64,000 nt of DNA from Dimorphilus gyrociliatus (Eukaryota; Animalia; Annelida): assembly GCA_904063045.1 (NCBI GenBank), contig CAJFCJ010000070.1, positions 200,785 through 264,784 on the forward strand. Direction: 5' to 3'. Positions within the stretch are counted from its first letter, which is position 1. Each line of letters opens with the position of its first letter. Shown in pieces: positions 3,131-64,000 of this stretch. Under the pieces are notes generated by a model that was not told where the DNA came from, did no database searches, and worked only from the letters and a program-made list of their open reading frames with translations. The position numbers and the translations under genes were made by a program.

Positions 3131-4039
3131 AAAGAAACTGCTAGAAAACAGAGGTTTGGTGTTTTTCCTTTTTTTTTCAATTTTATAAAAGTGGTTTTAA
3201 ATATTTTGAAAATTTTACACAGTCAATTAGAATTGGAGTTGAATTTTAAAAAATTTATTAGAGATGGTAAGCCAATTGTTTTAATGTTCTTTTGTCAGTT
3301 TTGTTTATTTTTTTACAATCAGTCATAGAATTTTATAACAATGCCTTTTCAAATCATATCACTTGCAATTTCAACTATAGTTTATTCGAAACTTTTGATG
3401 AGAAGAAATATAATTTTGATTGTTTAAAAATCTTTAAACTTTCTAAAAGTGTTATCAAGTCAATAGAGCTTTTATTTAAAAGTTCCATTTGCTTTGCAGA
3501 TCAAATTTATATTAAAAACATAAAGATTAATGTAATAAATTATTATACTTTTTATAAATTCAAGTGTGTTTTTGTTTGGTTTTTTTAATTTCAGTGCTTG
3601 TTCTACTTTTAGACAAAAGCAAAGAATTATGTTGTAATTATAGAAAATCTAAGAAATTTCTCTGTTGAAGATTCTCAAAAGAACATTTTTCAATATGGAT
3701 TATTTTTAAGGGAATTGCTTGAAAATATTAAAAAACATATATAAATAAGAAATATATGTTATGTTTACAAAAATTTTTGTGTTTGCTTATCTATAAAATG
3801 AGGTCTTGTGTAATGTTTTATTTTTAAAAATTAAATCAAAAACAGTTATGTTTAAAATCGAAACTAGATCTGTTAAACTTAAGATCATTCATGATTCAAT
3901 ATATATTATTAGCTATATTCTGAAAGAGATATTGATATTTAGACTTTAGATATAAATGAACTTTAGAATAACTTCTATTTCGTGGCAATTATAATGGTCC
4001 AACTTTATAAACTCTTTCATTTCGTAGAATAAGATTCTA

Positions 4040-4651
4040 GAACTTTAGAAAGAACTCTATTTTGTAGGAAATAGATTGTTTGCCCATAGAAGATGGAGCC
4101 ACTATGCAATTAACAAAGGAACAAAGAATATAGAAAAGATGCATGTGAAATTTGTTACATCTTAGGCAATACCAGATGCTACTGAAGAAGGCCTGTGTTG
4201 CAGTGGCACATGTTGGCCATATGGTGTTCATCTCATCATTGTATTCTATATGTGTGATATAATAGTTTTTCATATTTTTGTTACTTGTGGATTATGAGAC
4301 TGCTATATTTTTCCCTCCTAATCCTTTGACCAATTGAACCCAAGCTTTGGGAAATGTATAAGAGGAAATACATTTCCCCAGCTTGTCAGTTCAGTTCTTT
4401 AACTGTTAGCTAGCTGTTTAAACTTACTTATTTAGAACTAGAAACTCATTCACTGAATGCATAACCTTTGGACGAAATACTGGTGTTTTGTTGTTTAATT
4501 TCTACCAAAATTACATTTGTTGATACTGATTGTGGACGAACTTAAATGGTTCTATAGAACCAGTACTTTGGTCAGTTCATCAATCAGTCAAAATGATGAA
4601 TATTGCTCTGAAGAAGCAGAAATTCCTACAATTACAATACAGCAAAGTACA
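4040..4651 (+). repeat. Diverged LTR of Gypsy family A (variant U3)
   Basis: From 4153 (TGTTACATCTTAGGC) to ...CAAAGTACA at 4651 it aligns by eye with the solo LTR at 22185-22728. Upstream similarity to the 46433-46970 copy. Confidence 0.7.
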
Positions 4652-14882: not shown

Positions 14883-15580
14883 NNNNNNNNNNNNNNNNNN
14901 NNNNNNNNNNNNNNNNNNNNNNNNNNNNNNNNNNNNNNNNNNNNNNNNNNNNNNNNNNNNNNNNNNNNNNNNNNNNNNNNNNNNNNNNNNNNNNNNNNNN
15001 NNNNNNNNNNNNNNNNNNNNNNNNNNNNNNNNNNNNNNNNNNNNNNNNNNNNNNNNNNNNNNNNNNNNNNNNNNNNNNNNNNNNNNNNNNNNNNNNNNNN
15101 NNNNNNNNNNNNNNNNNNNNNNNNNNNNNNNNNNNNNNNNNNNNNNNNNNNNNNNNNNNNNNNNNNNNNNNNNNNNNNNNNNNNNNNNNNNNNNNNNNNN
15201 NNNNNNNNNNNNNNNNNNNNNNNNNNNNNNNNNNNNNNNNNNNNNNNNNNNNNNNNNNNNNNNNNNNNNNNNNNNNNNNNNNNNNNNNNNNNNNNNNNNN
15301 NNNNNNNNNNNNNNNNNNNNNNNNNNNNNNNNNNNNNNNNNNNNNNNNNNNNNNNNNNNNNNNNNNNNNNNNNNNNNNNNNNNNNNNNNNNNNNNNNNNN
15401 NNNNNNNNNNNNNNNNNNNNNNNNNNNNNNNNNNNNNNNNNNNNNNNNNNNNNNNNNNNNNNNNNNNNNNNNNNNNNNNNNNNNNNNNNNNNNNNNNNNN
15501 NNNNNNNNNNNNNNNNNNNNNNNNNNNNNNNNNNNNNNNNNNNNNNNNNNNNNNNNNNNNNNNNNNNNNNNNNNNNNNNN
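14883..15580. other. Assembly gap (698 N)
   Basis: Run of N inside the pol region of Gypsy B. Confidence 1.
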
Positions 15581-49550: not shown

Positions 49551-50232
49551 TATATGAATGAAAAATAATTATTCTTTGAAAATAATACATGAATTTAATA
49601 CAGAAATAACTCCCTTTTGAAACAGCTGAGCTATGATTCTACCAATAATAGAGTACTGGTCCTGATAGCACCAAATAGTTAGTAAAGTGGCTGGAAAAAT
49701 GAAAATTTCTAAGCAAACCAAAGGGCTAGGTTAGTTTAAAAGCAAAGCTTTTTGTGCACATTTTCCATGACATCCAAATTCATTCAGTACTGAATGCTTA
49801 ATTCTAGTTCAGGCTGCTTTTTATGCACTCTTTTTGTACAGGTAGATGGCTTATAGCACTGATAGCCAAGTGAAAGTGAACCTGGGTGTAGCTGTACCCA
49901 TTTCATTTCCCAATACCAATATATTGGCAACCCCTGAAAACATTTTTGGAAAAAGTTAGTTGGAAAATTTTTATTCATTTTTTGTTAGAGAGGTTGCATT
50001 TCTGTATCAGAGAATATAAATAACATAGATATTACCCAGAATTTCAGATATATTCTTAAAAGTTTACAGCTTCTGTGTGTATGTTTACACCTCCATCTAA
50101 GATATCTATAAGAATATTACTGAAAAGAATACAATAAAACAAATTATTGGACTATTGAAGAAAGAATACTATGCAAAAAAAATACTTAATGTTTGAATTA
50201 ATAATTCATGAGCCAATACCTTCCAAGTCTAT

Positions 50233-50933
50233 TGTACAACTTTGGTTATATTCTACATGCTTAAACTCTAGTACTTTATGCAACTTATACATGTACATCT
50301 TAAAACCTATGCAAGAAAATGCTATAACATTGGCCAAACATAAGTCTGATTAGTCAGCTTCAAGGCTCATCTTTAATTACCAATAAAGGTTTGGCCAAGT
50401 TATAATTCAATTAACCTTCCTAAATGTTCAACCTTGTTACATCCTCTTACTAAACATAAATATGAACTACACATTTCAGCAACTGTAAAGTGATGATTGG
50501 ATGTTAGAGGCAAACCTCAAAGTATATAAATCCTCACTATTCACATTCTGCGTGTCACTTGTATCTGGACCCAAGGACCTGGGAAGAGAACCTGGAAACA
50601 ACCTCCACTGGAACCATCCATCTACTCCTCAACATAGGAAGACAGTTTGGTAATTTGACAACCTGCTATTACAAACTATCTACTCTGCTATTGAACTCTC
50701 ATATTGTTACTTGCTTAAGTATTATTATTGCGAATAAACCATTTTATTTTAAACATTTGTTTAAAAGGTTTGAGTAGAACCAGTATTGTTATCACTTGCA
50801 AATGCATAGATTTTGTCAGCAAGAGCAGTACAAATTTGGCACAGTCGACAGGATATTATTTTGGTTTATTCAAAAGTTTGGAGAAATTAAATATGGCAGA
50901 AGGAGGAAATGGTAATGCCATTGGGGCAGCTAC
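50233..50933 (+). mobile_element. Diverged 5' LTR (50233-50832) of family B with PBS and the first gag codons, then truncated
   Basis: TGTACA...GTACA, PBS TGGCACAGTCGACAGGAT at 50837, ATG GCA GAA GGA GGA at 50893. Confidence 0.9.
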
Positions 50934-51149
50934 ATTTTGTATTTTTTAGATATGATAGTTAATTCATTTTAATAATATAGCTTTAATATTATAGCCTATA
51001 GTCTACTTTAGAAAATTCACTATTTTATTTTTTAATAGTGCATTGCATTATTTGTTTTAAATTCTTTAACCTTCATTATCTAACATAATAACTGTTGCTT
51101 CACACAAATTTGCATCATTATCTGGGTATTTTTGGTATTCCTTAACAAT

Positions 51150-52090
51150 TTATAAATGACGAATTACTGCAAATTTACATATATATTTACATAGTTTAAT
51201 AGAGAAGTAATCTGAATTTTCTGAATTATGAAAAGGACATTGGCACAGTGATAGGCTCCCGCAATTTTTAGTATTATCTTCCTTATAAACTGTAATATCT
51301 TGACAATCAAATGGATTCTTATTCTCTTTAAACCATAGGTTAAATTTTATTTCAATAAATATATTTCTATCAGTTGCCAATGGTTTCCACATTTCATCAA
51401 TATAAACAACGGAATCTTTCATTGCTGATTTACAATTACCAGTTGATGATAGGCAAGTTGAACCACTTTCAATTCTTGAAACATCTAATGATATCCAATT
51501 ATCAATTATTGACAGAGGGACAGTGGCTTTTTTAAGTTTTGATTCATTAGACCATTCATAACATGATAGAAAATATTTATTTAAAAACCAAGTATTTGAA
51601 ATTCACCAATTTCTAGATCATCATAATCAGATTCACTTACCATTACATAGATTCTAAATATAGATGTTAAGTTAGAAAATTCAATTTCATTCCAGCCATT
51701 AGTAAAATTATGCTGTAAAACATAATCTTCTGTATTGTCTGAAAATGTTAATGTCAAATTCAACTTTTCGTGTCCATTACGTAATTTTAGGAGATGTATC
51801 ATATGCAATTTAAAATTTTCTCCATCTTGAATTTGAAACCAAAATTTAAAATTACCAAATTCATACAATCCGTAATGAAGTGAACCACTTTGACGAAAAA
51901 TCTGGTCAGATGACAATAGATTTACGTAATCTTCATAAAATCCATAGATTAATGGTACAAACAATATGGTCGAACCGAAATAGCTTTTTGTCATATACAT
52001 TTCTTTTTTGAACAACTCATTCAAAGAGAGAAGGTTCTCCAATTGACAAACAGGTTTTTTTTCAATTGTCCAATTTGTGTATATAGACAC
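51150..52090 (-). pseudogene. Shorter inverted paralog of the 47135-49550 gene
   Basis: HNFTNGWNEI/LEIGEFQILG vs HNFTKGWNEI/LEVGEIQMLG. KDSVVYIDEMWKPLATD vs KDSVVFIDELWKSLATD. CKYICK. Confidence 0.6.
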
Positions 52091-53133
52091 GGGATAATGA
52101 TCTTATCTCTTCATTTCAGAAATTTTTAAATAATTAATGATCAATGTCAATTGAAATTCAATTTTATCAATATTTTTTATTTATTAAGTTTGAGGAGAAA
52201 TTGATTATCTGACTTTTCTTTATTAATACATTCAGTTTTTTGTTTGTCTCCACGAGTCAATAGCAAATGTCCATAAATTGATAGACTGGTAGACATAAAG
52301 AAAATCTATAGAAAATGAAGTATAAAATGCTAACTTAGTTTCCCTATTTTCACTTTTTTTTGATGTAATTTAAAAAGAAAATATGGGGTAAAATGTCATT
52401 GAATAAATACTTTTTATTTGGTAATATAAATGTTAGCAACTGGCCTGTTTGGTAGTGAATTTTATATTTCTATAATTGACCTTCACCTTTGAATTAATAT
52501 AGACTAGAAATCTACCTAACCCTAACCTTAAATAATTTATAAACCAAAGACATAAAACAAAGCAATTGATGTCAATTTCCAATTATCGCTAAATAAACTA
52601 TAAATCTGAAATTGAAACTTTATTCGAAGTTTCTATAGAATTCCAACCAGAATTTGTATCATAAACAATTTGTTGAGAAGCAATTTTAACTCTTTCAGTT
52701 GCTTGTAAATTATTTGTTTTATAGGCAAAAATGCTGAATGTTGTTCAGTAGCATTGGGCTTATATCCTGATATATATGTATCTGAGGATGTTGATCTTGG
52801 AGATCCTTCAATCAGCTTTCAGGATAATCTATCATTTTCATCTAAATGCAGAATAATCCCTTTTGATGCTTTATTGTTGAGTCCTTGGAAAGTTAATGAG
52901 AATGATTAGAAGCATTCTAAGCAAATTATCAGAGGAAGCTAAATTTACAGAAACAAATAGAAAATGGTCTGGAAATCAAAAGGAACAATTAAAACTTACA
53001 TATCTATAGGGCAGGAATTAAAAGGAAAGAACATCTATGAAAATAATTCTAGTTAAAAAATATAAGCATTATGGAAATATTTAGGGTGGGCGAAATTACA
53101 AGAAAATAGCTTATTAAAATGTCTTCTAAATTG

Positions 53134-53427
53134 TTAGGGTTAGGGTTAGGGTTAGGTTAGGGTTAGGGTTAGGTTAGGGTTAGGTTAGGGTTAGGGTTAG
53201 GGTTAGGTTAGGGTTAGGTTAGGGTTAGGGTTAGGTTAGGGTTAGGGTTAGGTTAGGGTTAGGGTTAGGGTTAGGGTTAGGGTTAGGGTTAGGGTTAGGT
53301 TAGGGTTAGGGTTAGGGTTAGGGTTAGGGTTAGGGTTAGGGTTAGGGTTAGGGTTAGGGTTAGGTTAGGTTAGGTTAGGGTTAGGGTTAGGGTTAGGGTT
53401 AGGGTTTGGTAAGGGTTATGGGTTAGG
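53134..53427 (+). repeat. Telomeric-type tract of mixed TTAGGG/TTAGG, degenerate in the last ~20 bp
   Basis: Directly visible. G-rich strand on +. Confidence 0.98.
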
Positions 53428-53736
53428 CCACTCACACAACTCTGGTAATGTTTTTGGGAACTGGTTAGCTAGTGTTCCAGTGTAATACCTAACTTTTACT
53501 CAATGTTAGGTAGGGGTTCTCCTTGGTCAGGATTATAGATCTGGGCTCCCAGTTCTAGTCAGGTTTTGGGAACTGGTTAGTTGGTGTTCCAGGGTTCTAC
53601 CAATTTTCCAATAGGTAGGAGTTCTCTATGTCTGAGCTCCTTGGTGCTTCAGTGCTCTGTCAAACTCTTAGTCTTATTCAATAACAATTAAATTTTTTCT
53701 TTTTCATCAACTTTTTATTTTAAACTTTAAAACATA

Positions 53737-53781
53737 TTACAACAATATTTCGCCTCTACTTGAGGCTTCATCAGGTTGTAA
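53737..53781 (-). ncRNA. Minimal type I hammerhead ribozyme (HHR1)
   Basis: UUACAAC CUGAUGA A GCCUC-AAGUA-GAGGC GAAA UA UU GUUGUAA: 7-bp stem I, 5-bp stem II, palindromic mini stem III (AUAU). Confidence 0.85.
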
Positions 53782-53884
53782 GTTAAACTGAACACAAACA
53801 TAAGTATTTATACCATCACCACAAAAAAAATTTATATATAAAACATGAAAACAAGATGGCTGCCCTTGCACTAGCGCCACCTAA

Positions 53885-54076
53885 CTACATTTTTCTTTGT
53901 TTCTTTGAAGGTACTACTTCAAATTCATCACCTGATCTTTTGATTAGGAGTCTTTGTTGTATTCCAATATTGCTATTCTCTTTTGGAGTGCTTTCATATT
54001 GATACTCACCATCTTCCATATCATCATAGTTGTCATCATCTTCTTCCTCCTCAGTCTGTTCCTTGGTAGGGACCAT
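53885..54076 (-). CDS. Possible small acidic ORF with bipartite NLS in the PLE1 3' region
   Basis: 63 aa, EEEEDDDNYDD tract, KR-x10-KKQRK, good start context (AAGAAATGG). Confidence 0.35.
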   Translation of the reverse strand: MVPTKEQTEEEEDDDNYDDMEDGEYQYESTPKENSNIGIQQRLLIKRSGDEFEVVPSKKQRKM

Positions 54077-54104
54077 TTCTTTGTCTGACTAAGTTGTAAG
54101 AACT

Positions 54105-54330
54105 GTTGAAGCTCACTTGAGCTCTTGGAGCTCTATTGAGTTCTTGGAGCTCTACTGAGCTCTTAGAGCTCTTGGAGCTCTACTGAGTTCTTGGAGCTCT
54201 ACTGAGCTCTTCAAGGTCTCCTGTGGTATTGGAGCTCAACTGAGCTACTGTAGCTCCTTGGAGCTCTTGGACCTTATTGTAGCTAACTGTAGCTTTTGGA
54301 GTTCATTGTAGCTTGTAGAGCTTGTTGTAG
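54105..54330. repeat. Short tandem repeats built on the palindrome GAGCTC
   Basis: GAGCTCTTG / GAGCTCTACT units downstream of the RT stop. Confidence 0.85.
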
Positions 54331-54343
54331 CTGCTGAAATTCA

Positions 54344-56697
54344 TTACAGTTCTTGGAGTTCACTTTGGCTTTTCTGGAGTAGAATTTTTTCTATGTGTTT
54401 TTCCATCATCTCATCAACCTTCTTATTGATAAGCCAGTGTCTGGTAGTAGTTGGGATCCTAAAGGCAGTTATTGACTTATACATTTGGAAGTGAGAGCTG
54501 TTAGGGGCTAGCTGGTGGATTGTTCTCTTGACTTTCTCAGCTATTAGTTGGGCTCCATTGTGTTGTGGTATGAGGAGTGGTACCATTTCCTTGGTGGTAA
54601 AACCTTCATGTTTATTAAGACCATGTGGGAACAGTGTATCCAAATGGTTGATGATTTCAGTTTCTTTTCTCATTAACCAAACTATTACTGAGCTCTCTGT
54701 GAGTTCCTTAGGAGCTACAGCAGCTATGTAGATCTTGAACTTCTTGATATCATGTGTTGCCATATGGTTATATAGTGGTCTATCTATCTTGTTTTTGAAG
54801 CCCAAATTATGGGTACCCCATCTACACTTGATAGTATCTGTAGTCATACCCACATATGCTAACCCACACATAGAGCATTGTAGGATATAGACACAACCAT
54901 TGGTGTTACAGTTAATGCTTTGGGTTAAGCTCCAAGAGTTGACCTGGTATAGGTCAAATACCTCATCTCTGGAGTCCAGTCTGAGGCAAGTATCACATCT
55001 AGTGTTACAACATTTATTGACTTTATACCTCAGTGCCTTTTTTTCTTCAGCTCTGGTGTTGAATTTTTTGATGGTGTCCCTCCCCATTCTCCAGGTGTAG
55101 CCATTGACTTTATTGATTCTAATGAGATCTTTGAACTGTGAGATAGCCATTTTGGGATCTTTGCAGTTTCTCATATATCTAGTTAGCTGGCTCATTAGGA
55201 TACCTCTGAATGTGTGTGGTGGATGATTGGATTTGGTGTGTAGCAGTATTCTGGAGTCAGTAGCCTTAAAATGGGTTTCCCAGGAAAGAGAGTTCCCTAG
55301 TATATGTAGGTCCAAGTCCAGAAAAGTACTTGATTTAGGGTTCTGGGACCAAGTGAGCTTGATATCTGGATTTCTGTTGTTTAGTCTTGTCTTGAACTCC
55401 ATGATGTCCCTGTCTGGTTTAGTGACCAAAATGATATCATCAATGTACCTGCCATAGTACTCAATGTCCTCTGTAAAATCTGTGACCAATTCATGTTCCC
55501 AGGTGTGTAACACTATGTTTGCATATGCAGGACTAAATGGAGCTCCCATAGCTGTGCCCTTTATTTGCAGGAACCTGTGGTTCCCAAAGGTGAAATCATT
55601 GTTGTTGAGACAAATCCAAAGGAGTTCCAAGATTAGTTCATCAGGTCTACCTTCATGGTAGTGGGTTAACATGAACTCTTTAACAGCTTTTATGCCCCAT
55701 TGAGGGTTAATGCTTGGGTATAGAGCTTCTACATCTGCTGTGAAGATCCCTCTGTTTTGCCAATTATGTATCATAGATAGTTTGCCAATGCAATGTTGGG
55801 TGTTTTTAACATAGCTAGTGGTACTTTTTGCCATTTTGACCAGATAGTGATCAACAAATTTAGATATTTTATATAGATCAGAGCCTACATAGCTCACCAC
55901 TGGTCTCCCCTTGGGGATCCTATATGGTACTCTCCATTGGGAGCTGTGTTTATGAATTTTAGGTAGGAGGTAAAACTTTCTATCTCCTGGGCTATTCTGT
56001 GGAGCCATCAGAGTTGCTGTAGATTTGGTAATAATTTTCATTGTAACCAATTCATTAAGGATTTCATTTAACCGGGTCCATTGGGTAGAGCTTATTTTAT
56101 TGCTGACCTGTTTGTAGGTTGTTCTGTCACAGAGCTGTGTCATGGCTTCAAAGACATAGTCCTCTTTGTCCATTAAGACAATCCTTCTTCCTTTATCAGC
56201 TGGTTTAATGATAATGTTAGGATGATTGTTGAGGAAGTTTTTCATTAGGCCTTGATTTTCAAAACCCTTCTGGGCTCTATTAATTTTTTCAGAGCCCTTT
56301 ATAATGTCATATATCCTGTCTGTGATATGGTTAATTTCTGGAATATGACTAGAGGGCATGTAATTTAACTCCCTCATTAGTTCAGGTAGAGATGGTGCTT
56401 GTATGTCAAGAAGTTTTTTCTTTAGTGGATTATTTCGAAATCTTGGTGTACCATTTTTCTCAATGATCTTTAGCCATTTTAATGTATAATCCAAGATCCC
56501 TGTGAAGTGCAAGTTTATAAATTTATTTGGGGCCCAAGTCCAGGCAAAGCCCAGACCTTGTGCCATAGTGTTCAGGCAAGAACTCTTGATGTTAGAGTTC
56601 CTACATAGGTTAAAAACCATACTTGGTTCTGTTTTATTGATAAAAACATGTTTAAAAACATTATAATTGTTATGCTGTTGTGCTTGAAGAGTTAGGA
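54344..56697 (-). CDS. PLE1 RT - GIY-YIG endonuclease (frame open 26 codons upstream of the ATG at 56620)
   Basis: VFNL..QGLGF, IKPADKG, FYLLPKIHK, GRPVVS, DVEALYPSI, GTAMG, YIDDI. Linker CCNTRCDTC. VYILQCSMCGLAYVGMT..R..H..H..E..GLN. Confidence 0.95.
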
Positions 56698-57474
56698 GTT
56701 TCCCTGGTCCATAGTCTCCTCATCAGCACTCATTTTCTCTGTAATTCCTTTAAATAAGACAGTCATGATTGCCAATTCCTTTCTTAGTTCTGAGATTTCA
56801 TCCTTAGAGTTCTTGTAAGGTTCTTTGTGTCTGGTTTTGTCTGCTGGTTTCTTGGATCTCTGTATGGTAGGGAGCTCTTTGAAATTTTCATGGAGCTCTC
56901 TATTGAAAGAGTCATCTAAGGGAGCTTTTAGATTTTTGGTAACCAAGTATACACTTTCTTTAAGTTGGGCCCAATTAATCTTTTTGCCATATTTTTGTAT
57001 CGATCTGGTTTTGGCTACTTCAATAGCTTTCTTAACCTCTGATTGATTGTAATTTTGCTGATCATTTTTTATCTTGTCCCTCATTTTAGAGAGCCTCTCA
57101 TTGAGCTCCTCCAGCACCACTCTATTTGTTTCTCTAGCACAAGTATTGGCTATTTCATGTAGTTGGTTGAGTCTTTCCCCAGTAATGGGACCTCCTGTGA
57201 TTCTAATTGAGTCCATCATATCCATGGCCTTTTTGGTCCAAGGGTTATATTCCTTAAGTCTCTCAATCTGGTGAATAGAACTGTAAGTTTTACTCATAGC
57301 TCTAGTCAGGGCTTTTTCCTTGTCACTTAGAGAACCTTTAAAACCATTTGCATCAGGTGCAGTCTGGCTCTTTGTGACTTGTACCCATCTGGGTTTGTCT
57401 GGAGCTCTGGAGTAGGGTGTCTTTCTTCCTGTTTTTTTTGTTCTTCTAGGAGCTTGGTTTTGTTTAGGGTCCAT
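56692..57474 (-). CDS. PLE1 ORF1, basic and coiled-coil-like
   Basis: 260 aa, strong start context GCAATGG, helical charged heptads (LEELNERLSKMRDKI; KDEISELRKEL). Confidence 0.85.
   Translation of the reverse strand: MDPKQNQAPRRTKKTGRKTPYSRAPDKPRWVQVTKSQTAPDANGFKGSLSDKEKALTRAMSKTYSSIHQIERLKEYNPWTKKAMDMMDSIRITGGPITGERLNQLHEIANTCARETNRVVLEELNERLSKMRDKIKNDQQNYNQSEVKKAIEVAKTRSIQKYGKKINWAQLKESVYLVTKNLKAPLDDSFNRELHENFKELPTIQRSKKPADKTRHKEPYKNSKDEISELRKELAIMTVLFKGITEKMSADEETMDQGNS
56698..56704 (-). promoter_or_regulatory. -1 ribosomal frameshift slippery heptamer G GGA AAC
   Basis: In the ORF1 frame (CAG GGA AAC TCC TAA). The -1 frame is open from here into the RT ORF. Confidence 0.75.
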
Positions 57475-57478
57475 TGCC

Positions 57479-57609
57479 AGGGTTAGGGTTAGGGTTAGGG
57501 TTAGGGTTAGGTTAGGGTTAGGTTAGGGTTAGGGTTAGGTTAGGGTTAGGGTTAGGTTAGGGTTAGGTTAGGGTTAGGGTTAGGGTTTAGGGTTAGGTTA
57601 GGGTTAGGG
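57479..57609 (+). repeat. Second mixed TTAGGG/TTAGG tract between PLE1 and PLE2
   Basis: Directly visible. Confidence 0.98.
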
Positions 57610-57856
57610 TTTTATATAGGTTTGAACTAGACACTAAGGTCTCAGTTCTGATGAAAGTCAAATAACTTCCACCAAACTTTCAGAAGATCCCATAATGAAA
57701 TGGAATGCAAGAGTAAGAACTTATTGTACATTTTAAAACAAGTACTCTTCCCATCACTAATCAATTTATGTCTGTTTGTTTGTTTTTGATTTGGTTTTAA
57801 ATTGCAATAGTATGTTTAACCTAGGATATATTAATCTAGATGGTTGCCAAGTATGG

Positions 57857-57911
57857 TTGACCTACCATGGTTTCGTCTTCCCCTTTTAATGCAAAGACTC
57901 ATCAGGGTCAA
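57857..57911 (-). ncRNA. Type I hammerhead ribozyme (HHR2)
   Basis: UUGACC CUGAUGA GUCUU-14nt-AAGAC GAAA CCAUGG UA GGUCAA: complete core, palindromic stem III ACCAUGGU, GUA cleavage triplet. Confidence 0.93.
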
Positions 57912-58706
57912 TTCAGAGGATAGTATAACCTAAGAACTATCTTGAAGGGGGGGAGAGGATCAATTCTACAATTGAATCCTTCCCTGCAGTAAGTTTTTGG
58001 TTATAAGCCTAATCATAAATTGTTATATGTATGTATATGTATCATTATGTGTAGGTGTATGTGTGATTGTGTATGTATATATCAACCATTGAAGTTGATT
58101 TTTGTAATAGTTGTCAACAAGTTGAGATTTGTTTTTTGTAATTTTTTTGTAATTTTTTTAGTTTGTTTCCTATTAGGATTATGAAGATGATTTTGGTCAT
58201 ATAGATAGTTGTATTTTGATGCCTAATTTTTTATAATTTGTGAGGTTATATATGGTATTCATAAGAACTTTTGTTTTTAACAATGAATGCATGTGTGTAT
58301 GTTTGTGTGTAAATATGTTTTTTATTTGTTTTGAATGGATAAAAGTTGATGTTTTTTAATTTTTGATTGAATTTGTGATGATCAGATGTTAAGTTCAACT
58401 TGTACTGTTCCTCAAAACCCCTTGACTCTTCTTACTTGTGATTAGGTTTTATATAGGTTTGAACTAGACACTAAGGTCTCAGTTCTGATGAAAGTCAAAT
58501 AACTTCCACCAAACTTTCAGAAGATCCCATAATGAAATGGAATGCAAGAGTAAGAACTTATTGTACATTTTAAAACAAGTACTCTTCCCATCACTAATCA
58601 ATTTATGTCTGTTTGTTTTTTTTGATTTGGTTTTTTTGATTTGGTTTTAAATTGCAATAGTATGTTTAACCTAGGATATATTAATCTAGATGGTTGCCAA
58701 GTATGG

Positions 58707-58761
58707 TTGACCTACCATGGTTTCGTCTTCCCCTTTTAATGCAAAGACTCATCAGGGTCAA
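58707..58761 (-). ncRNA. Type I hammerhead ribozyme (HHR3, identical to HHR2)
   Basis: Same sequence in the second repeat copy. Confidence 0.93.
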
Positions 58762-59795
58762 TTCAGAGGATAGTATAACCTAAGAACTATCCTGAAGGGG
58801 AGGAGAGGACCAATTTTATAATTGAATCCTTCCTTGCAAGAATGTTCTTGTTGTATGGATGTTGAAATTGTATGTGTATTTGTATGTTTATATATGTATG
58901 GATGAATATCAACCATAGAAGTTGATTCTTTATAATACTTGTCAATAAGATGACTTTTGTTTTGTAATATCTAGTTGCTTACTTTTCAGTTATTGAAATT
59001 TTCTTTGGTCTGATATATAGTTATTTGCCTAATGGTTTTTTTTGTTGTCCTATTGGTATGTTTAGGTATAATGTAGGTACAATGTGTATATAATGTTTAC
59101 AAAAGATGCCAGAGTTTATAATTTTCATTTGTTCCTGTTCCTCATTGAACAATTTTTGAACTGTTAAACAGCAAGATATATAATCCAAGTTGTCTGACAG
59201 GTCTTATAGTGTTAATGAAAGAAATGAAATTGATGAAAATCAACTATAACATCTTAAAGTCACCTGGACATATATAAACAAATAGATGCATAAATGTAAA
59301 ACATTATAGTATCTTTAATTTCACAAATGAACAAACAAACATATAGCTTACTTTGTTTTTTCTTTCAGAGTTGTTTGATGTAGAAAAATGATCTTTTGTT
59401 GTATGTAGATGTTGAATCACTAAACAGAGTTTTTGTAGAGAGCAGTCCTTCTTGTTCTGAGAATTTTCTTGAAGTGATGATGTTTGATAGACCTTGTAGC
59501 TTATATAGAGGAGTGTTATGTAATTGACATATCCTAAGATATGTCAGTTTATCTTGACAAGTATCTGGTATTACATAAAAGTTTTAGTATCCCAAGCCTA
59601 GACACATTTGGTATTATATAAGAAGTGATATGTCAGCCTCTGGCATTCCAGTGTGTCACACACCTAATCAATTTTGCATTGATATAAATACATAGTTATA
59701 TTATGCTAATATTACTATTTTAAACTAGAGAAATATCAAAGTGTTTATATAAAATATACAGAGATTGAAATTTAGTTTTGATAGGTCTGTTAATT

Positions 59796-60023
59796 TCACT
59801 CATTGTGTTGTTCCTCTATAGCCTGAATATCTTGTCTGTTTAATCTTCTTCTTCCAGTTCTTCTTTGTTGTTGTTCTATCACATCTTTAGTGTTTACTAA
59901 TATCTCATTAAAAATTAAATGTTGAACAATATTTCTTAAAGGAGATATCTTGTCCTGTTGGAGTCTTCTATGAAAAGGATCTCCTCTTATAATGCCATTG
60001 ATATAAACAATATTTGTAAACAT
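59796..60023 (-). CDS. Short ORF downstream of the 276-aa ORF (possible -1 frameshift extension)
   Basis: 75 aa, ATG 5 nt after the upstream stop. Frame open from 60053. Confidence 0.4.
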   Translation of the reverse strand: MFTNIVYINGIIRGDPFHRRLQQDKISPLRNIVQHLIFNEILVNTKDVIEQQQRRTGRRRLNRQDIQAIEEQHNE

Positions 60024-60028
60024 TTTTT

Positions 60029-60859
60029 TTAACCTTTCTGGTAGAAATTTTGATTATTAAAATTATCCTGAACTTTGTATGATATAAACAGCATACATTC
60101 CTTAATATTTCCATTACTTTGATAAATAGCTGGAAAATTATCATCAATATCATTAATGGTGTCAAAAGGAATATGTAGAGCTACAATGTTAGTTTTTATC
60201 TTCCATTTTGATAAGATTTCTTTGCAATTTTCAAATGTTAATCCACAAATATTTACAATCAAAATATTTCCATGAAAATTGATATTCCTCTTAACATCTT
60301 CTATTTGAAACAAATCCAAATCACTCAAACTAGCATCTGTTAAGAGAAGCAAATTACAGTTGGTAGTAAATTTCACTGCTGGTTGTTGAATTTTCATAAG
60401 ATTTTCCATTTCCCCTTCTGTTAAATTCACTCCAATATCTGCAAAAGATGCTAGTAGTTCACCAACATTGAAATGTTTTCTTCTATTAACTTTGATTGTA
60501 TTATTAAATCTTACAAGCTGGTCAGTACCATTCAAATATCTTAATATCACTTCTCCAAGTTGTTGTTTATTTATATTATTTACTTGGTGTTGTTCAACAA
60601 GCCACATTTTTTCATCACAAAATTGTTTAAATTTCATCAGTTTGTCTACAGTATCTTTTTCAAATTTACTTGCATCAAAAATTGGAGGATGATTTCTGTC
60701 ATCTCTTCTAAATCTTTGAAGATGATTATAAAATGTTCCAAAGTTAAAAAATTGTTGAAAAGATGGTGGTAAAAAATGTTCAATATCAATTATTTGATTG
60801 ATAAGAATTGCATCATTTTCTATTCTTTCAATTTGATTTTGTGGAGTATTATTTGCCAT
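60029..60859 (-). CDS. Orphan 276-aa ORF within PLE2
   Basis: Long open frame in very AT-rich DNA, co-oriented with RT. No confident motif. Confidence 0.6.
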   Translation of the reverse strand: MANNTPQNQIERIENDAILINQIIDIEHFLPPSFQQFFNFGTFYNHLQRFRRDDRNHPPIFDASKFEKDTVDKLMKFKQFCDEKMWLVEQHQVNNINKQQLGEVILRYLNGTDQLVRFNNTIKVNRRKHFNVGELLASFADIGVNLTEGEMENLMKIQQPAVKFTTNCNLLLLTDASLSDLDLFQIEDVKRNINFHGNILIVNICGLTFENCKEILSKWKIKTNIVALHIPFDTINDIDDNFPAIYQSNGNIKECMLFISYKVQDNFNNQNFYQKG

Positions 60860-60962
60860 TATAGAAAATCTATAAAAACAAAATAATTTAGTAAAATTTA
60901 GTATATTCTACACAAAAAGAATATTATAGATATGAACTGAACAAATCTAAGAATACATAGAA

Positions 60963-60966
60963 TATC

Positions 60967-61003
<37 letters not shown>
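60963..61003. repeat. (TA)n microsatellite between the PLE2 ORFs
   Basis: Directly visible. Confidence 0.9.
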
Positions 61004-61004
<1 letters not shown>

Positions 61005-61097
61005 GTTGTACAGATATATGCAGTGAAAAGCAAATTATTATGAAGCAAACAAAACAAATATTCAAAGGAAAACAACTAATTAAAAAATATTGAAAGT

Positions 61098-63992
61098 TTA
61101 AAGTTTCTTCTTAATTCTTCTTCCAGTTCTAACCATCTTCTCTGCAACTACTGGTTTATGTTCGTCTGTTTCCTTCTCCATCTTCCTCTTCATAGTGAAT
61201 TTTCTTGTAATTGTATCAAACTTTGGTTTTTTTCCTGGTTGAGGTGGTGCACTAAGTGAAGATGTTTCTTCTGCATTCTTCTTTTTATAAAAATGTTTAA
61301 TTGTTGATGTTCCTGTTTTATTTAGTGAAAAATGACATTTTTCTGATGAATCTGTACTAGTTGTATTTCTTTTATGAAATAAGGAAGTAGACATATTTTG
61401 TTCCTGTTTAAAATAAATGTTTTTATGAATTAATTGAAAATAACTATTTATGTTGTTTGTAAAAGCAAATATCAGAGGAATGTTTTTAAATATGGAATTC
61501 TTATCACTTAATAATTTATAGGTTTTTGTTAATTTTTTTAACACTGGTCCATGATCATTTCTATAAGGCATAATTAATGGTAGCTTTGAATATACTGGAC
61601 AACTGGTATATCTGGCTAAGCCAAAGGGATAATACATGACATTTTTCATATTCAAGTGATAAATATATCTGTTCATTTCAATTGTTGATTTATCTCTTTG
61701 CAATTGTTCATAAGGAAATATTGTTATATTAAATTGATTTTCTGCAAAATGTTGATGCTGGATATAGTTTTCTACTAGGTCAATATTATTCAATTCCAAA
61801 TATTTTCTTGATAGAAGGTATTTAAGTGTTTGTAAGATGTTGATTTTTTTATGTTGCTGTATAGAAAAGTACATCATTTGTCCACATTCTTTACATTGTA
61901 ATAGAAATACTTTTGAGTTATCTGTAATTAAATCTACACAGTTTTTCCTATAAATGAAATTCATGTTTAGAGGGCAGAATATCTTTTTTCTTATGTTAAA
62001 ATATATTCTTAATTCCTTTGGAATATTCCACTGTTTCTTTCTATTTTCTTCCAACACTCTTTCATAGTTTTCTTTCTTCATTTGGTCTTTAATTACAGAC
62101 TGTATTGCTTTTTTTATTTCTTTAGCACTGTAGCCTTGACTGGAAAGTGGTTTCATCACAGTTTGACAAGTTTGAAAGAATAGAAATGGAGAGGAGCTGT
62201 TATTAAGAAATCTTTTGAATTGAGATTTTAAAAGTCCTTTAAAGATATGTTTAGGATGAAAAGAAGTTCTATGAAGTTGATGAAATGTTTCACAATTTTT
62301 GAAGAAAGTTAGATGATCCAATTGATTTGTTGAGAGAAATCTTGTTCCTTTAAATAGAATTAAATCTAAAAAGTTGATTGATTGAAAACTAGTTGTTCCC
62401 TCAAACTTTAAATTTTTTAATATATTATTGACTTTTTGAAGATAGCTATGAAATGTATCAATGCTACCTGTCCAAATTAGGAAAATATCATCCAAATATC
62501 TTTTATAAAATAGAGGTTTAGGTCTAATGTTGAAGAGGTAGACTTCTTCCACCCAAGCCATCCATAAGTTTGCATAAGCAGGAGCATAACTTTGACCCAT
62601 AGCACAACCACTCTTTTGTAAGTATATTGTATCTAAAAATTTAAAATGATTCTTATGCAAGTTGAATTTGAGAAGTTGAATAAGAAAATCATCAGGTCTG
62701 TGCTTGTAGGAATACTTTTCAAAAAAATATTTTACAGCTTTCAATCCAGTGTAAGTATCAATGTTTGTATACATACTTTTTATGTCCAGAGTCACCAAAA
62801 GAGCATCATCTGGAATTGTTATTCTATTAAGTTCATCCAACAGTTGTTTAGAATTACCAATATATGAAGAATGTAGCATACTAATTGGTTTGAGGTGATG
62901 TGAGATATATCTTGATATTTCATAAGATTCTGTCCTTAAATTGCTAACAACAGGCCTTCCTTTAGGAATTTTACCATCAACCAACCATTGTTCTGGTTCC
63001 TTATGTATTTTAGGTAAGCCATAAAATATTCTATTCTCAAAAGAATGCTTCTTTGTACACAGAGAATCCAACAAATGTTTATATTCTTTTTCATCCAAGG
63101 TAACTTTAAATGTTTTAATTAGGTCTTTATAATAGAAAATTGAGTTTTCTAAAAATTTATTACCAGAAATATTTATATTAGAAGTTGTTGATAGTTTACA
63201 ATATTGTTTATTATCAGAAAGTAATTGATTGCACATGTAGATATAATCTTCAGTATTTTGTATCACAACACAAGATCCCTTGTCAGCTGGCTTAATCACA
63301 ATGTCTAATGATAAAAACTTTCTCAGAGATTTAAAGAAATCTTTGTCAAATTTTCCAAGTTTTTGATTAGAATTCTCTTTAAAAATATTACTTTGAATTG
63401 CCTTTCTGCATCCTTTGAAAAATTGTAACATTTCATCACTGTCACCATCACCACCATCATCATCATCAGTATCATCTAGTTCTTCAACAGATGTTATATT
63501 TCTTTCAAATCCTTCTTTTGGTATCCATTGATAGTTAATACATGTAAGATTTTCCAGATTTGTTGATTTATTTTGTTTTTTAATGATTGATACTTTTTTA
63601 AAGAATCTCTCTAAATTGAACAATGTGTATTGCTTCCATTTGTCTGGTTTTATACTTTCATGTACAAACTTTAAACCAAGATTAAAAAAACTATTGACAT
63701 CATTTGGAATCTGATATTTGCTCAAATTAACAACATATTGAGTATTTAATTGTTTATAGAAATTAAATCCAGACATTAATATTACCTTGTTAGTTGATGT
63801 ATCTATGTCCATTGTTTCCTCTTTCTGATCTTTGATAATTCTCTGCAAAGTTTTCATTACTAAATCAATTGAAAATTCTTGTGCCTTCTTTGTCAGGTGT
63901 TTACATTTCGAATTTCCAGTTGGATTATCTGTAAATCCCAATTTTCTCATATCAGTCATATCAAGAACAGTGGCTTGGTTCTTAGTTGCCAT
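61098..63992 (-). CDS. PLE2 reverse transcriptase with degenerate GIY-YIG-like domain (may extend upstream of the window)
   Basis: VVNLS..LGLKF, IKPADKG, FYGLPKIHK, GRPVVS, LDIKSMYTNI, GCAMG, YLDDI. The EN region reads VFLLQCKECGQMMYFS...GLAR. Confidence 0.93.
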   Translation of the reverse strand: MATKNQATVLDMTDMRKLGFTDNPTGNSKCKHLTKKAQEFSIDLVMKTLQRIIKDQKEETMDIDTSTNKVILMSGFNFYKQLNTQYVVNLSKYQIPNDVNSFFNLGLKFVHESIKPDKWKQYTLFNLERFFKKVSIIKKQNKSTNLENLTCINYQWIPKEGFERNITSVEELDDTDDDDGGDGDSDEMLQFFKGCRKAIQSNIFKENSNQKLGKFDKDFFKSLRKFLSLDIVIKPADKGSCVVIQNTEDYIYMCNQLLSDNKQYCKLSTTSNINISGNKFLENSIFYYKDLIKTFKVTLDEKEYKHLLDSLCTKKHSFENRIFYGLPKIHKEPEQWLVDGKIPKGRPVVSNLRTESYEISRYISHHLKPISMLHSSYIGNSKQLLDELNRITIPDDALLVTLDIKSMYTNIDTYTGLKAVKYFFEKYSYKHRPDDFLIQLLKFNLHKNHFKFLDTIYLQKSGCAMGQSYAPAYANLWMAWVEEVYLFNIRPKPLFYKRYLDDIFLIWTGSIDTFHSYLQKVNNILKNLKFEGTTSFQSINFLDLILFKGTRFLSTNQLDHLTFFKNCETFHQLHRTSFHPKHIFKGLLKSQFKRFLNNSSSPFLFFQTCQTVMKPLSSQGYSAKEIKKAIQSVIKDQMKKENYERVLEENRKKQWNIPKELRIYFNIRKKIFCPLNMNFIYRKNCVDLITDNSKVFLLQCKECGQMMYFSIQQHKKINILQTLKYLLSRKYLELNNIDLVENYIQHQHFAENQFNITIFPYEQLQRDKSTIEMNRYIYHLNMKNVMYYPFGLARYTSCPVYSKLPLIMPYRNDHGPVLKKLTKTYKLLSDKNSIFKNIPLIFAFTNNINSYFQLIHKNIYFKQEQNMSTSLFHKRNTTSTDSSEKCHFSLNKTGTSTIKHFYKKKNAEETSSLSAPPQPGKKPKFDTITRKFTMKRKMEKETDEHKPVVAEKMVRTGRRIKKKL

Positions 63993-64000
63993 TTGAATAT

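What the first reader, a model, noticed from the sequence alone, without database searches (positions are those of the whole stretch)
53134..64000. Telomere-associated array of Penelope-like elements, including an endonuclease-competent member
Seen: (TTAGGG/TTAGG)n - PLE1 antisense - (TTAGGG/TTAGG)n - PLE2 antisense, with each element's 3' end joined to the G-rich tract. Known: this polarity is that of the telomeric Athena/Coprina PLEs and bdelloid Terminons, which prime on the G-overhang and lack an endonuclease in the RT ORF. Unusual here: PLE1 has a fully conserved C-terminal GIY-YIG with a Neptune-type Cys linker, and two different families share the niche. Inference: a retroelement-assisted telomere elongation or telomere-targeting system coexisting with telomerase.
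Basis: partly seen in the sequence, partly recalled or inferred. Interest (0 to 1): 0.92.

Follow-up and report, generated by a model that had tools for sequence, protein, structure and literature searches.

The report
Telomere-attached Penelope elements with endonuclease
Near a chromosome end of the small annelid Dimorphilus gyrociliatus, telomerase-related jumping genes lie head to tail between telomere repeats, each ending in its own telomere-like tail, and one lineage does this while keeping an intact-looking DNA-cutting domain that tip-dwelling elements of this class were thought to lack.

Summary
Two G-strand tracts of mixed TTAGGG/TTAGG (53133-53396, 57479-57611) are each followed by an antisense Penelope-like element (PLE) whose 3' end abuts the tract.

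PLE1 (53397-57478) has ORF1, a -1 frameshift site, an RT plus intact GIY-YIG ORF with a CX3CxxC linker, a minimal hammerhead, and a constant 31-nt degenerate C-strand telomere tail.

Genome-wide, 38 PLE1 tails were found. Fourteen run into the next copy, 14 into telomere tracts, two into one repeat and eight into other DNA. All lie in the same array-bearing contigs.

Copies cut short at different 5' positions are capped by telomere repeats, twice under ~600-bp tracts that end a sequence piece.

Two sister families (52-67% identical) keep the tail, the hammerhead (with compensatory changes) and every endonuclease catalytic residue; dN is 0.27-0.40 with dS saturated.

PLE2 belongs to a separate lineage with an eroded endonuclease and hammerhead-bearing 3' repeats. 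Five of its six array ends meet telomere repeats.

My reading is a telomere-specialised PLE primed on G-strand 3' ends through the tail. What the endonuclease does, and any benefit to the host, are not shown.

The genome paper mentions neither PLEs nor telomeres. Other agents of this scan reached the same reading on other pieces of this genome.

The parts
53133..53396 (+). Telomerase-type G-strand tract 1 (TTAGGG with about 23% TTAGG), lying on DNA whose last ~600 bp have no other match in the genome
53397..53427 (-). PLE1 element-coded 31-nt degenerate C-strand telomere tail; identical variant repeats in all 26 3' ends read
53428..57478 (-). PLE1 body (short 4.1-kb form); its 5' end stops 16 nt short of the leader seen in tandem copies and is capped directly by tract 2
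53737..53781 (-). Minimal type-I-like hammerhead (1-bp stem III, palindromic loop), about 310-355 nt before the PLE1 3' end
   Evidence: 6 of 13 pairs show compensatory changes across three families, 0 of 500 shuffles reach this. Rfam does not report it at E<=10.
53885..54076 (-). Last 63 codons of ORF3; the full 401-aa ORF3 is present only in the 5.26-kb long variant elsewhere
54344..56620 (-). PLE1 ORF2: RT plus C-terminal GIY-YIG; the linker and endonuclease occupy about 54596-55015
56698..56704 (-). Slippery heptamer G_GGA_AAC in the ORF1 frame, one codon before the ORF1 stop; a -1 shift opens into ORF2
   Evidence: A_AAA_AAC at the same place in PLE1b
56692..57474 (-). PLE1 ORF1 (260 aa, no Pfam family)
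57479..57611 (+). Telomerase-type G-strand tract 2, between the PLE1 5' end and the PLE2 3' end
57612..59290 (-). PLE2 3' region: two tandem ~840-bp units (junction at 58444/58445; the upper end is approximate), each with a hammerhead (57865-57923 and 58715-58773)
60029..60859 (-). 276-aa ORF downstream of the PLE2 RT ORF, no family match
61098..64000 (-). PLE2 RT ORF with an eroded GIY-YIG remnant. It continues to 64211, is then interrupted by a MULE (about 64125-66850), and its N-terminal ~700 aa follow to about 68840 outside the window.

Best explanation
The region is part of a subtelomeric array of telomere-specialised Penelope-like retroelements in what is almost certainly Dimorphilus gyrociliatus. 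PLE1 and its sister families make an RNA, probably read from tandem copies and possibly processed by the hammerhead. That RNA carries an AC-rich 31-nt stretch that mimics the C-strand of the telomere, just upstream of the next unit's ORF1. Reverse transcription starts in this stretch, the position where PLE reverse transcriptases are known to initiate internally. It is primed by a G-strand 3' end that can base-pair with the stretch, so the cDNA is joined tail-first to telomere repeats with the element's 5' end facing the chromosome tip. Incomplete copies leave a new end that telomerase re-caps. Copying of multi-unit RNA, or homing into an existing tail, gives head-to-tail tandems without repeats in between. 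Shown here: the anatomy, the junction classes, the orientation, and conservation of tail, hammerhead and endonuclease. Inferred: base-paired priming, telomerase capping, and the job of the endonuclease. My guess is that it nicks tail-like and telomeric DNA and so frees the element from waiting for an uncapped end. PLE2 is an independent lineage doing the same with a dead endonuclease.
For: Anatomy.

Tail: constant on 26 of 26 3' ends read.

Genome-wide census of 38 tails: 14 tandem, 14 into tracts of two or more repeats, 2 into one repeat, 8 into other DNA, all on array-bearing contigs.

5' ends capped by repeats at element positions 1, 591, 3689, 3748 and about 4011. Two of these lie under about 600-bp tracts: one at the start of contig C162, one on a piece of C254 bounded by an N run.

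Orientation: the 5' end faces the nearer contig end wherever contig lengths are known (C70, C41, C162, C80).

Internal and terminal tracts have the same TTAGG share, 23-35%.

Sister families PLE1b and the C80 family keep the GTGAGTGG box plus a telomere-like tail and a hammerhead with compensatory changes. They keep the linker Cys, GIY, CC, YIG, R, H, E and N. Endonuclease identity is 57-62% against 62-71% for the RT core, with dN 0.27-0.40 and dS saturated.

Two relatives from one unnamed public run also have the box plus a CCCTAA-like stretch just before ORF1.

PLE2: 5 of 6 array ends meet telomere repeats.

A run from a different study holds a tail, three repeats and a truncated PLE1 in one contig.

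Literature: internal RT initiation in an AC-rich site that defines the PLE 'tail', and multi-copy mRNA (PMC11167929). EN- PLEs use reverse-complement telomere repeats next to hammerheads (PMC8557442).
Against: C70 does not reach a terminal tract, and its last 13 kb hold other repeats, including a short tract in the opposite orientation.

Fifteen of 16 full-length 5' ends sit in tandem arrays without telomere repeats, which unequal recombination could also produce.

Eight to ten 3' ends join non-telomeric DNA.

One full copy in C162 is inverted.

No run on record as RNA was found, so transcripts, their ends and hammerhead cleavage are untested.

Rfam does not score the PLE1 hammerhead, and it scores the PLE2 ones only at E 6-7.

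Sequence alone cannot separate priming at a natural end from priming at an endonuclease nick.

The TTAGG units could partly be homopolymer errors of a long-read assembly.
Confidence: 0.7

Rival explanations
1. Endonuclease-dependent, site-specific insertion inside double-stranded telomere repeats, a PLE counterpart of the silkworm TRAS/SART elements. The endonuclease nicks the G strand within a tract, the tail anneals at the nick, and both flanks are old telomere rather than new telomerase product.
For: The endonuclease and Zn-linker are intact and under constraint in three tail-bearing families. Linker-bearing PLEs are reported to prefer microsatellite targets (PMC8557442). The Penelope endonuclease was reported to need the 'tail' sequence for recognition (cited in PMC11167929). 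PLE1 in the window has telomere repeats on both sides.
Against: Tracts on the 3' side are mostly very short (0-65 bp in most cases, against about 600 bp at terminal tracts). About a quarter of 3' ends sit on no repeat at all. That fits eroded or broken ends better than random nicks in a long tract. PLE2-type elements reach the same places without a working endonuclease.
Confidence: 0.2
2. Passive pile-up. These are ordinary dispersed PLEs that survive only in gene-poor subtelomeres and are multiplied there by unequal crossing-over and segmental duplication. The interstitial telomere tracts are scars of breakage and healing unrelated to the elements.
For: Many copies are 99% identical and lie in exact tandems of 4.1, 4.7 or 5.26 kb. 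Inverted duplicated flanks occur in C107. Other repeats share the arrays.
Against: Every tract next to an element begins exactly at the element-coded tail. The tail is conserved in families only 52% identical. Two unrelated lineages show the same polarity. No 3' end was found in ordinary chromosomal context.
Confidence: 0.06
3. Assembly artefact: telomere-containing reads were misjoined to repeat contigs.
For: The arrays lie on small or gap-containing scaffolds (C254 is joined over an N run). C70 ends in mixed repeats. The reads could be laid only as contigs and not across the tracts.
Against: The same junction types recur on more than 15 contigs with different tract lengths and truncation points. 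A contig from another study's run reproduces a tail-repeat-PLE1 junction.
Confidence: 0.03

Closest known systems
Athena and Coprina (endonuclease-deficient telomeric PLEs; Gladyshev and Arkhipova 2007, as summarised in PMC8557442 and PMC3846280)
   Same: The 3' end carries short reverse-complement telomere repeats with a hammerhead nearby. Elements are joined 3'-first to G-strand repeats. 5'-truncated copies are re-capped by telomere repeats. Chains lie at chromosome ends, and telomerase is present.
   Different: PLE1, PLE1b and the C80 family keep a canonical RT-fused GIY-YIG with all catalytic residues. PLE2 keeps a dead remnant rather than lacking the domain. The hammerhead lies about 300 nt upstream of the tail. 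The host is an annelid.
Neptune/Nematis-type EN+ PLEs (PMC8557442)
   Same: C-terminal GIY-YIG with an internal CCHH and an upstream CX2-5CxxC linker, the DKG motif, pseudo-LTR/tandem organisation, a 30-40-nt 'tail', and ORF1 separated by a frameshift.
   Different: Those are described as dispersed within chromosomes, often at (TA)n. Here no 3' end was found outside telomere-associated arrays, and the tail mimics the telomere C-strand.
Terminons of bdelloid rotifers (Arkhipova et al. 2017, as described in PMC5537684 and PMC8557442)
   Same: Telomere-attached PLE chains with several ORFs. Some units carry GIY-YIG-type ORFs with both Zn motifs. The long PLE1 variant has an extra ORF3 whose N-terminus resembles the linker plus GIY half.
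   Different: Units here are 4-5 kb (PLE1) or roughly 11 kb including the inserted MULE (PLE2), not up to 40 kb. The RT is not shown to be of the Athena clade. The endonuclease is fused to the RT.
TRAS/SART of Bombyx and HeT-A/TART of Drosophila (my own knowledge; PMC5537684 for Drosophila)
   Same: Retroelements dedicated to telomeres, in fixed orientation and head-to-tail arrays. TRAS/SART coexist with telomerase-type repeats and use an endonuclease.
   Different: Those are non-LTR elements with an AP-type endonuclease or none. They have no telomerase-like RT, no hammerhead and no telomere-mimicking tail.
Poseidon PAc of Anolis (PMC11167929)
   Same: Multi-copy RNA, and reverse transcription starting inside an AC-rich site near the ORF start, which defines the genomic 'tail'.
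   Different: In PAc the initiation site has no homology to the cut DNA and the targets are AT-rich. Here the equivalent site is complementary to the G-strand it is joined to.

Membership tests
Penelope-like elements | PLE-type reverse transcriptase with upstream DKG and downstream motifs | tested here: met
   RVT_1 1.4e-10 for PLE1. IKPADKG, PKIHK, PKGRPVVS and YxDD are present in both elements. Hundreds of RT plus GIY-YIG homologues were found.
Penelope-like elements | Tandem or pseudo-LTR organisation with a 30-40-nt tail | tested here: met
   Head-to-tail units with a 31-nt tail and 16-nt leader. A partial upstream copy (positions 3748-4051) precedes a full copy at C162.
Penelope-like elements | Hammerhead ribozyme motif in the repeated 3' or pLTR part | tested here: met
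   The core is conserved, and stems I and II show 6 compensatory pairs among three families. PLE2 has weak Rfam hammerhead hits with an intact core. Cleavage was not tested.
Canonical EN+ PLE with linker (Neptune/Nematis type) | C-terminal GIY-YIG with R, H, E, N, an internal CCHH and an upstream CX2-5CxxC | tested here: met
   Pfam GIY-YIG 27.5 bits, above the 22.6 cut-off. Alignment with 8 database PLEs. Applies to PLE1, PLE1b and the C80 family only.
Neptune clade | RT groups with named Neptune references | not testable with these tools
   No named reference sequences were available. In a tree of 79 rows, PLE1-type rows sit in a well-supported 8-row linker-bearing clade.
Athena/Coprina (EN- telomeric PLEs) | No endonuclease domain | tested here: not met
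   PLE1-type elements have an intact domain. PLE2-type elements keep an alignable remnant with the linker Cys, the YIG, the H after the R, and the N lost.
Athena/Coprina (EN- telomeric PLEs) | Reverse-complement telomere repeats at the 3' end, and attachment to G-strand repeats with re-capped 5' truncations | tested here: met
Terminons | Giant units (tens of kb) with Athena RT and cargo ORFs | tested here: not met
   Unit lengths are 4.1, 4.7 and 5.26 kb. PLE2 spans about 11 kb including an inserted MULE.
TRAS/SART-type telomere-specific non-LTR elements | Non-LTR RT with an AP endonuclease | tested here: not met
   The domains are a PLE RT and a GIY-YIG. The resemblance is functional only.

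The most novel reading that the evidence does not exclude
The endonuclease of this lineage has been retargeted to the telomere repeat itself through a tail that mimics the telomere. The elements would then be a living intermediate between dispersed EN+ PLEs and end-priming EN- PLEs, and a standing back-up that rebuilds eroded or broken chromosome ends alongside telomerase.
Probability: 0.15. Interest if true: 0.9.

Novelty: new variant of a known kind. Interest (0 to 1): 0.72.

Why it matters
Current descriptions split PLEs in two: endonuclease-bearing elements that spread inside chromosomes, and endonuclease-lacking ones confined to chromosome tips (PMC8557442). Here three related families combine the tip-dweller's equipment (telomere-complementary tail, hammerhead, re-capped truncations) with a conserved endonuclease. 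Beside them is a second lineage caught with a dead one.

That makes the gain or loss of end-priming in the closest relatives of telomerase testable in one small, culturable animal. An in vitro PLE system that could be adapted already exists (PMC11167929).

It also bears on the published observation that Neptune groups weakly with EN- Coprina in RT trees.

Tried and rejected
- Rfam on 50000-64000 at E<=1 gave no hammerhead. A narrow scan still missed the PLE1 motif, so I relied on covariation instead.
Flanks of the 8-10 non-telomeric 3' junctions, and most contig lengths, therefore could not be read, and target-site duplications could not be tested.
I then laid the part between the tracts, as the tool suggested. 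Only contigs were available, so no read spans a tract and no RNA ends could be seen.
- dN/dS could not be computed because dS is saturated.
- I suspected a second locus (C185) with the same 5' cap as the window copy, but the census of full-length 5' ends did not list it. I dropped it.
- No telomere repeat caps the PLE2 5' side, and no PLE coding sequence lies between about 69 kb and the contig end.
- P0007 was not on record for context.
- A second relative, L036, shows no tail-like stretch.
- Pfam gives nothing for ORF1 or for the N-terminal 716 aa of PLE2; for ORF3 it gives only sub-threshold coiled-coil-type matches.
- Naming the RT clade was not possible without reference sequences.
Full report
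WHERE THIS IS

The window is G000:C70:200785-264784. C70 is 283,104 b long in a 77.9-Mb assembly of 349 contigs. The nearest named proteins are from Dimorphilus gyrociliatus. One of those gene models maps to G000:C46 at 91-98% identity. The published assembly of that annelid has about 350 scaffolds for a 73.8-Mb genome (PMC7854359). I therefore take the organism to be D. gyrociliatus. That paper mentions neither Penelope elements nor telomeres.

THE OBSERVATION

Tandem Repeats Finder reports G-strand arrays at 53133-53427 and 57479-57611. On the minus strand lie these ORFs:
- ORF1, 56692-57474.
- ORF2, 54344-56620, with Pfam RVT_1 and GIY-YIG.
- A second RT ORF beyond tract 2, 61098-63992, which continues to 64211.

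The second RT ORF is 27% identical to PLE1 across the RT and endonuclease region. Both elements are antisense on the + strand with their 3' ends against the tracts.

The last ~600 bp before tract 1 have no other match in the genome.

PLE2 runs on outside the window. A FLYWCH/MULE transposon with subterminal repeats interrupts its ORF at about 64125-66850. Another ~700 codons of the same giant ORF follow, as shown by uninterrupted relatives on C76 and C3. C70 continues 18 kb past the window and ends in mixed repeats, not in telomere repeats.

ANATOMY OF PLE1

I compared the window copy with copies on C41, C107, C162, C254 and C269. All 26 3' ends carry the same 31 nt, CCTAACCCATAACCCTTACCAAACCCTAACC. 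This is a degenerate C-strand telomere sequence whose variant repeats never change, so the element encodes it. In the window it occupies 53397-53427.

In tandem arrays the tail is followed by a 16-nt leader and then by the sequence that starts the window copy. The window copy lacks the leader and is capped directly by tract 2.

ORF1 ends one codon after a G_GGA_AAC heptamer that sits in the ORF1 frame, and the -1 frame is open into ORF2. The PLE1b family has A_AAA_AAC at the same place. A frameshift-separated ORF1 is a known PLE option (PMC8557442).

A longer 5.26-kb variant carries a 401-aa ORF3. Its Cys-rich N-terminus weakly resembles the element's own linker plus GIY half (E 0.006). A coiled coil follows. 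It has a homologue in a related element from another organism (E 6e-18). The window copy keeps only the last 63 codons of ORF3.

HAMMERHEADS

About 310-355 nt before the PLE1 3' end is a CUGAUGA...GAAA motif with a 1-bp stem III and a palindromic loop. I recall this as the minimal form reported for PLE hammerheads (Cervera and de la Pena 2014, cited in PMC8557442; I did not read that paper here). Rfam does not score it.

The same motif occurs at the same place in PLE1b and in the C80 family. On the three-way alignment:
- 94.9% of cells pair.
- 6 of 13 pairs carry changes on both sides.
- No shuffle out of 500 reaches this, and slid controls fall to 26-58% paired.

PLE2 has a motif with an intact core in each of its two ~840-bp 3' units. 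Rfam reports these weakly, at E 6-7.

THE ENDONUCLEASE

PLE1, PLE1b and the C80 family were aligned with eight database PLEs. All three keep the following:
- the CX3CxxC linker;
- GIY, the two internal Cys, and YIG;
- the R, H, E and N positions listed as catalytic in PMC8557442.

The three families are 52-67% identical overall. The linker-plus-endonuclease segment is 57-62% identical, close to the RT core at 62-71% and well above the termini at 34-40%. Non-synonymous divergence in this segment is 0.27-0.40 while synonymous sites are saturated. The domain has therefore been kept by selection throughout the divergence of three families that all carry the telomere-like tail.

PLE2 and four relatives (C76, C68, C51, C3) lack the linker Cys. 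They have a ~12-residue insertion in place of the YIG and have lost the H after the R, and the N. Even so, the segment is conserved among them.

In a tree of 79 rows:
- PLE1-type rows form a supported clade with one foreign relative, inside an 8-row linker-bearing clade.
- PLE2-type rows form a separate long-branched clade.

The two lineages are thus not close kin. No named references were available, so clade names cannot be given.

GENOME-WIDE JUNCTIONS

A pattern for the end of the tail plus 16 free positions found 38 PLE1 tails at one mismatch or fewer:

| What follows the tail | Count |
|---|---|
| Leader of the next copy | 14 |
| Two or more telomere repeats | 14 |
| One repeat | 2 |
| Unrelated DNA | 8 |

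Two further tails, one base shorter, also sit on unrelated DNA. Several of the eight lie within 0.1-3.3 kb of another tail or telomere tract (C3, C5, C22, C51, C93).

For PLE1b the counts are 11 tandem, about 4 on short repeats and 1 on other DNA.

For the exact PLE2 family, internal units follow each other five times. Of six array ends, five meet telomere repeats. On C3, tracts start right after three successive PLE2-type 3' ends.

Sixteen full-length PLE1 5' ends exist. Fifteen are in tandems, and the window copy is the only one capped by repeats.

Truncated 5' ends capped by repeats occur at element positions 591, 3689, 3748 and about 4011. The C80 family and PLE1b also have capped truncated copies.

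Two caps are long tracts that end a sequence piece:
- 623 bp at the very start of C162.
- 597 bp at the end of the left piece of C254, before an N run.

Where contig lengths are known, the 5' end of the elements faces the nearer contig end. One copy in C162 is inverted. Internal and terminal tracts have the same mixture of units, 23-35% TTAGG. A TERT RNA-binding domain is encoded on C10.

INDEPENDENT DATA

Four runs of one 2020 study hold PLE1. These are probably the source of the assembly and so are not independent. A 2017 run from another study, under another species label, holds a 404-nt contig made of PLE1 positions 3700-4051, the tail and three telomere repeats running into another tail. 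That contig is about 100 times the depth of the ORF. It reproduces a tail-repeat-truncated-PLE1 junction outside the assembly. It also hints at a short hammerhead-bearing tandem or circular unit.

No run on record as RNA was found.

MECHANISM

Frangieh et al. (PMC11167929) showed the following for a Poseidon element:
- The template is a multi-copy RNA.
- Reverse transcription starts inside an AC-rich site near the ORF start.
- That site defines the genomic 'tail'.

In PLE1 the equivalent site is the telomere-mimicking tail, 21 nt upstream of ORF1. I infer that a G-strand 3' end pairs with it and primes cDNA synthesis, as proposed for Athena and Coprina (PMC8557442, PMC3846280).

This explains three things:
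- The constant 3' junction.
- The polarity.
- The tandems, through copying of multi-unit RNA or homing into an existing tail.

Repeat-capped truncations are explained by telomerase acting on the new end.

Tracts on the 3' side are mostly far shorter than terminal tracts, and a quarter of 3' ends have none. That fits attachment to eroded or broken ends better than random nicking of long tracts.

Why the endonuclease is kept is not resolved. The Penelope endonuclease is reported to need the tail sequence for recognition (cited in PMC11167929), so nicking of tail-like and telomeric DNA is my preferred guess. The TRAS/SART-like alternative remains open.

COMPARISON AND NOVELTY

The published framework places EN+ PLEs inside chromosomes and EN- PLEs at termini. 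Terminons occasionally carry separate GIY-YIG ORFs (PMC8557442, PMC5537684). My paper searches found no description of a canonical RT-fused EN+ PLE with a telomere-complementary tail confined to telomere-associated arrays.

I class this as a new variant of a known kind. Other agents of this scan reached the same reading on other pieces of this genome. I reached mine before reading those notes, but they are not independent evidence.

Noticed in passing
window 64125-64000+ (L011:129-2847): A FLYWCH/MULE DNA transposon with 16-21-nt subterminal repeats sits inside the PLE2 ORF, splitting a ~1,700-aa reading frame that is continuous in relatives on C76 and C3.
   Followed up: partly
L017:4524-5729 (C162); remnant at window 53885-54076: The long PLE1 variant encodes a 401-aa ORF3. 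Its Cys-rich N-terminus weakly resembles the element's own Zn-linker plus GIY half; a coiled coil and an acidic tail follow. It has a homologue in a related element, L035.
   Followed up: partly
window 53419-53779, run X5: A 2017 run from another study has a 404-nt self-overlapping contig (hammerhead, 3' end, tail, three telomere repeats) at about 100 times the depth of the ORF. This may be a short tandem or circular hammerhead unit, as in retrozyme-like satellites.
   Followed up: no
window 53752-53790, run X6: A 2024 run with the same species label differs from the window almost only by G>A changes. This looks like bisulfite or enzymatic conversion rather than strain divergence.
   Followed up: no
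window 50600-50935: A 335-bp dispersed repeat with at least 40 copies at 94-95% identity across many contigs; not identified.
   Followed up: no
L035:1-80 and L037:640-745: Two PLE1-clade relatives from one unnamed public run also have a GTGAGTG box and a degenerate CCCTAA-like stretch just upstream of ORF1, so the telomere-like tail may predate this genome's families.
   Followed up: partly
C70 beyond the window (window-equivalent 76042-76679): The 3' end of another repeat is followed by a 22-bp C-strand tract, in the opposite orientation to PLE1 and PLE2. The distal part of the contig may be inverted or misjoined.
   Followed up: no
window 14883-15580: A run of N inside the window (a gap or a withheld stretch).
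   Followed up: no
G000:C10:286333-286790: Two exons matching the telomerase RNA-binding domain (43 and 40 bits, above the cut-off); a probable TERT gene.
   Followed up: no
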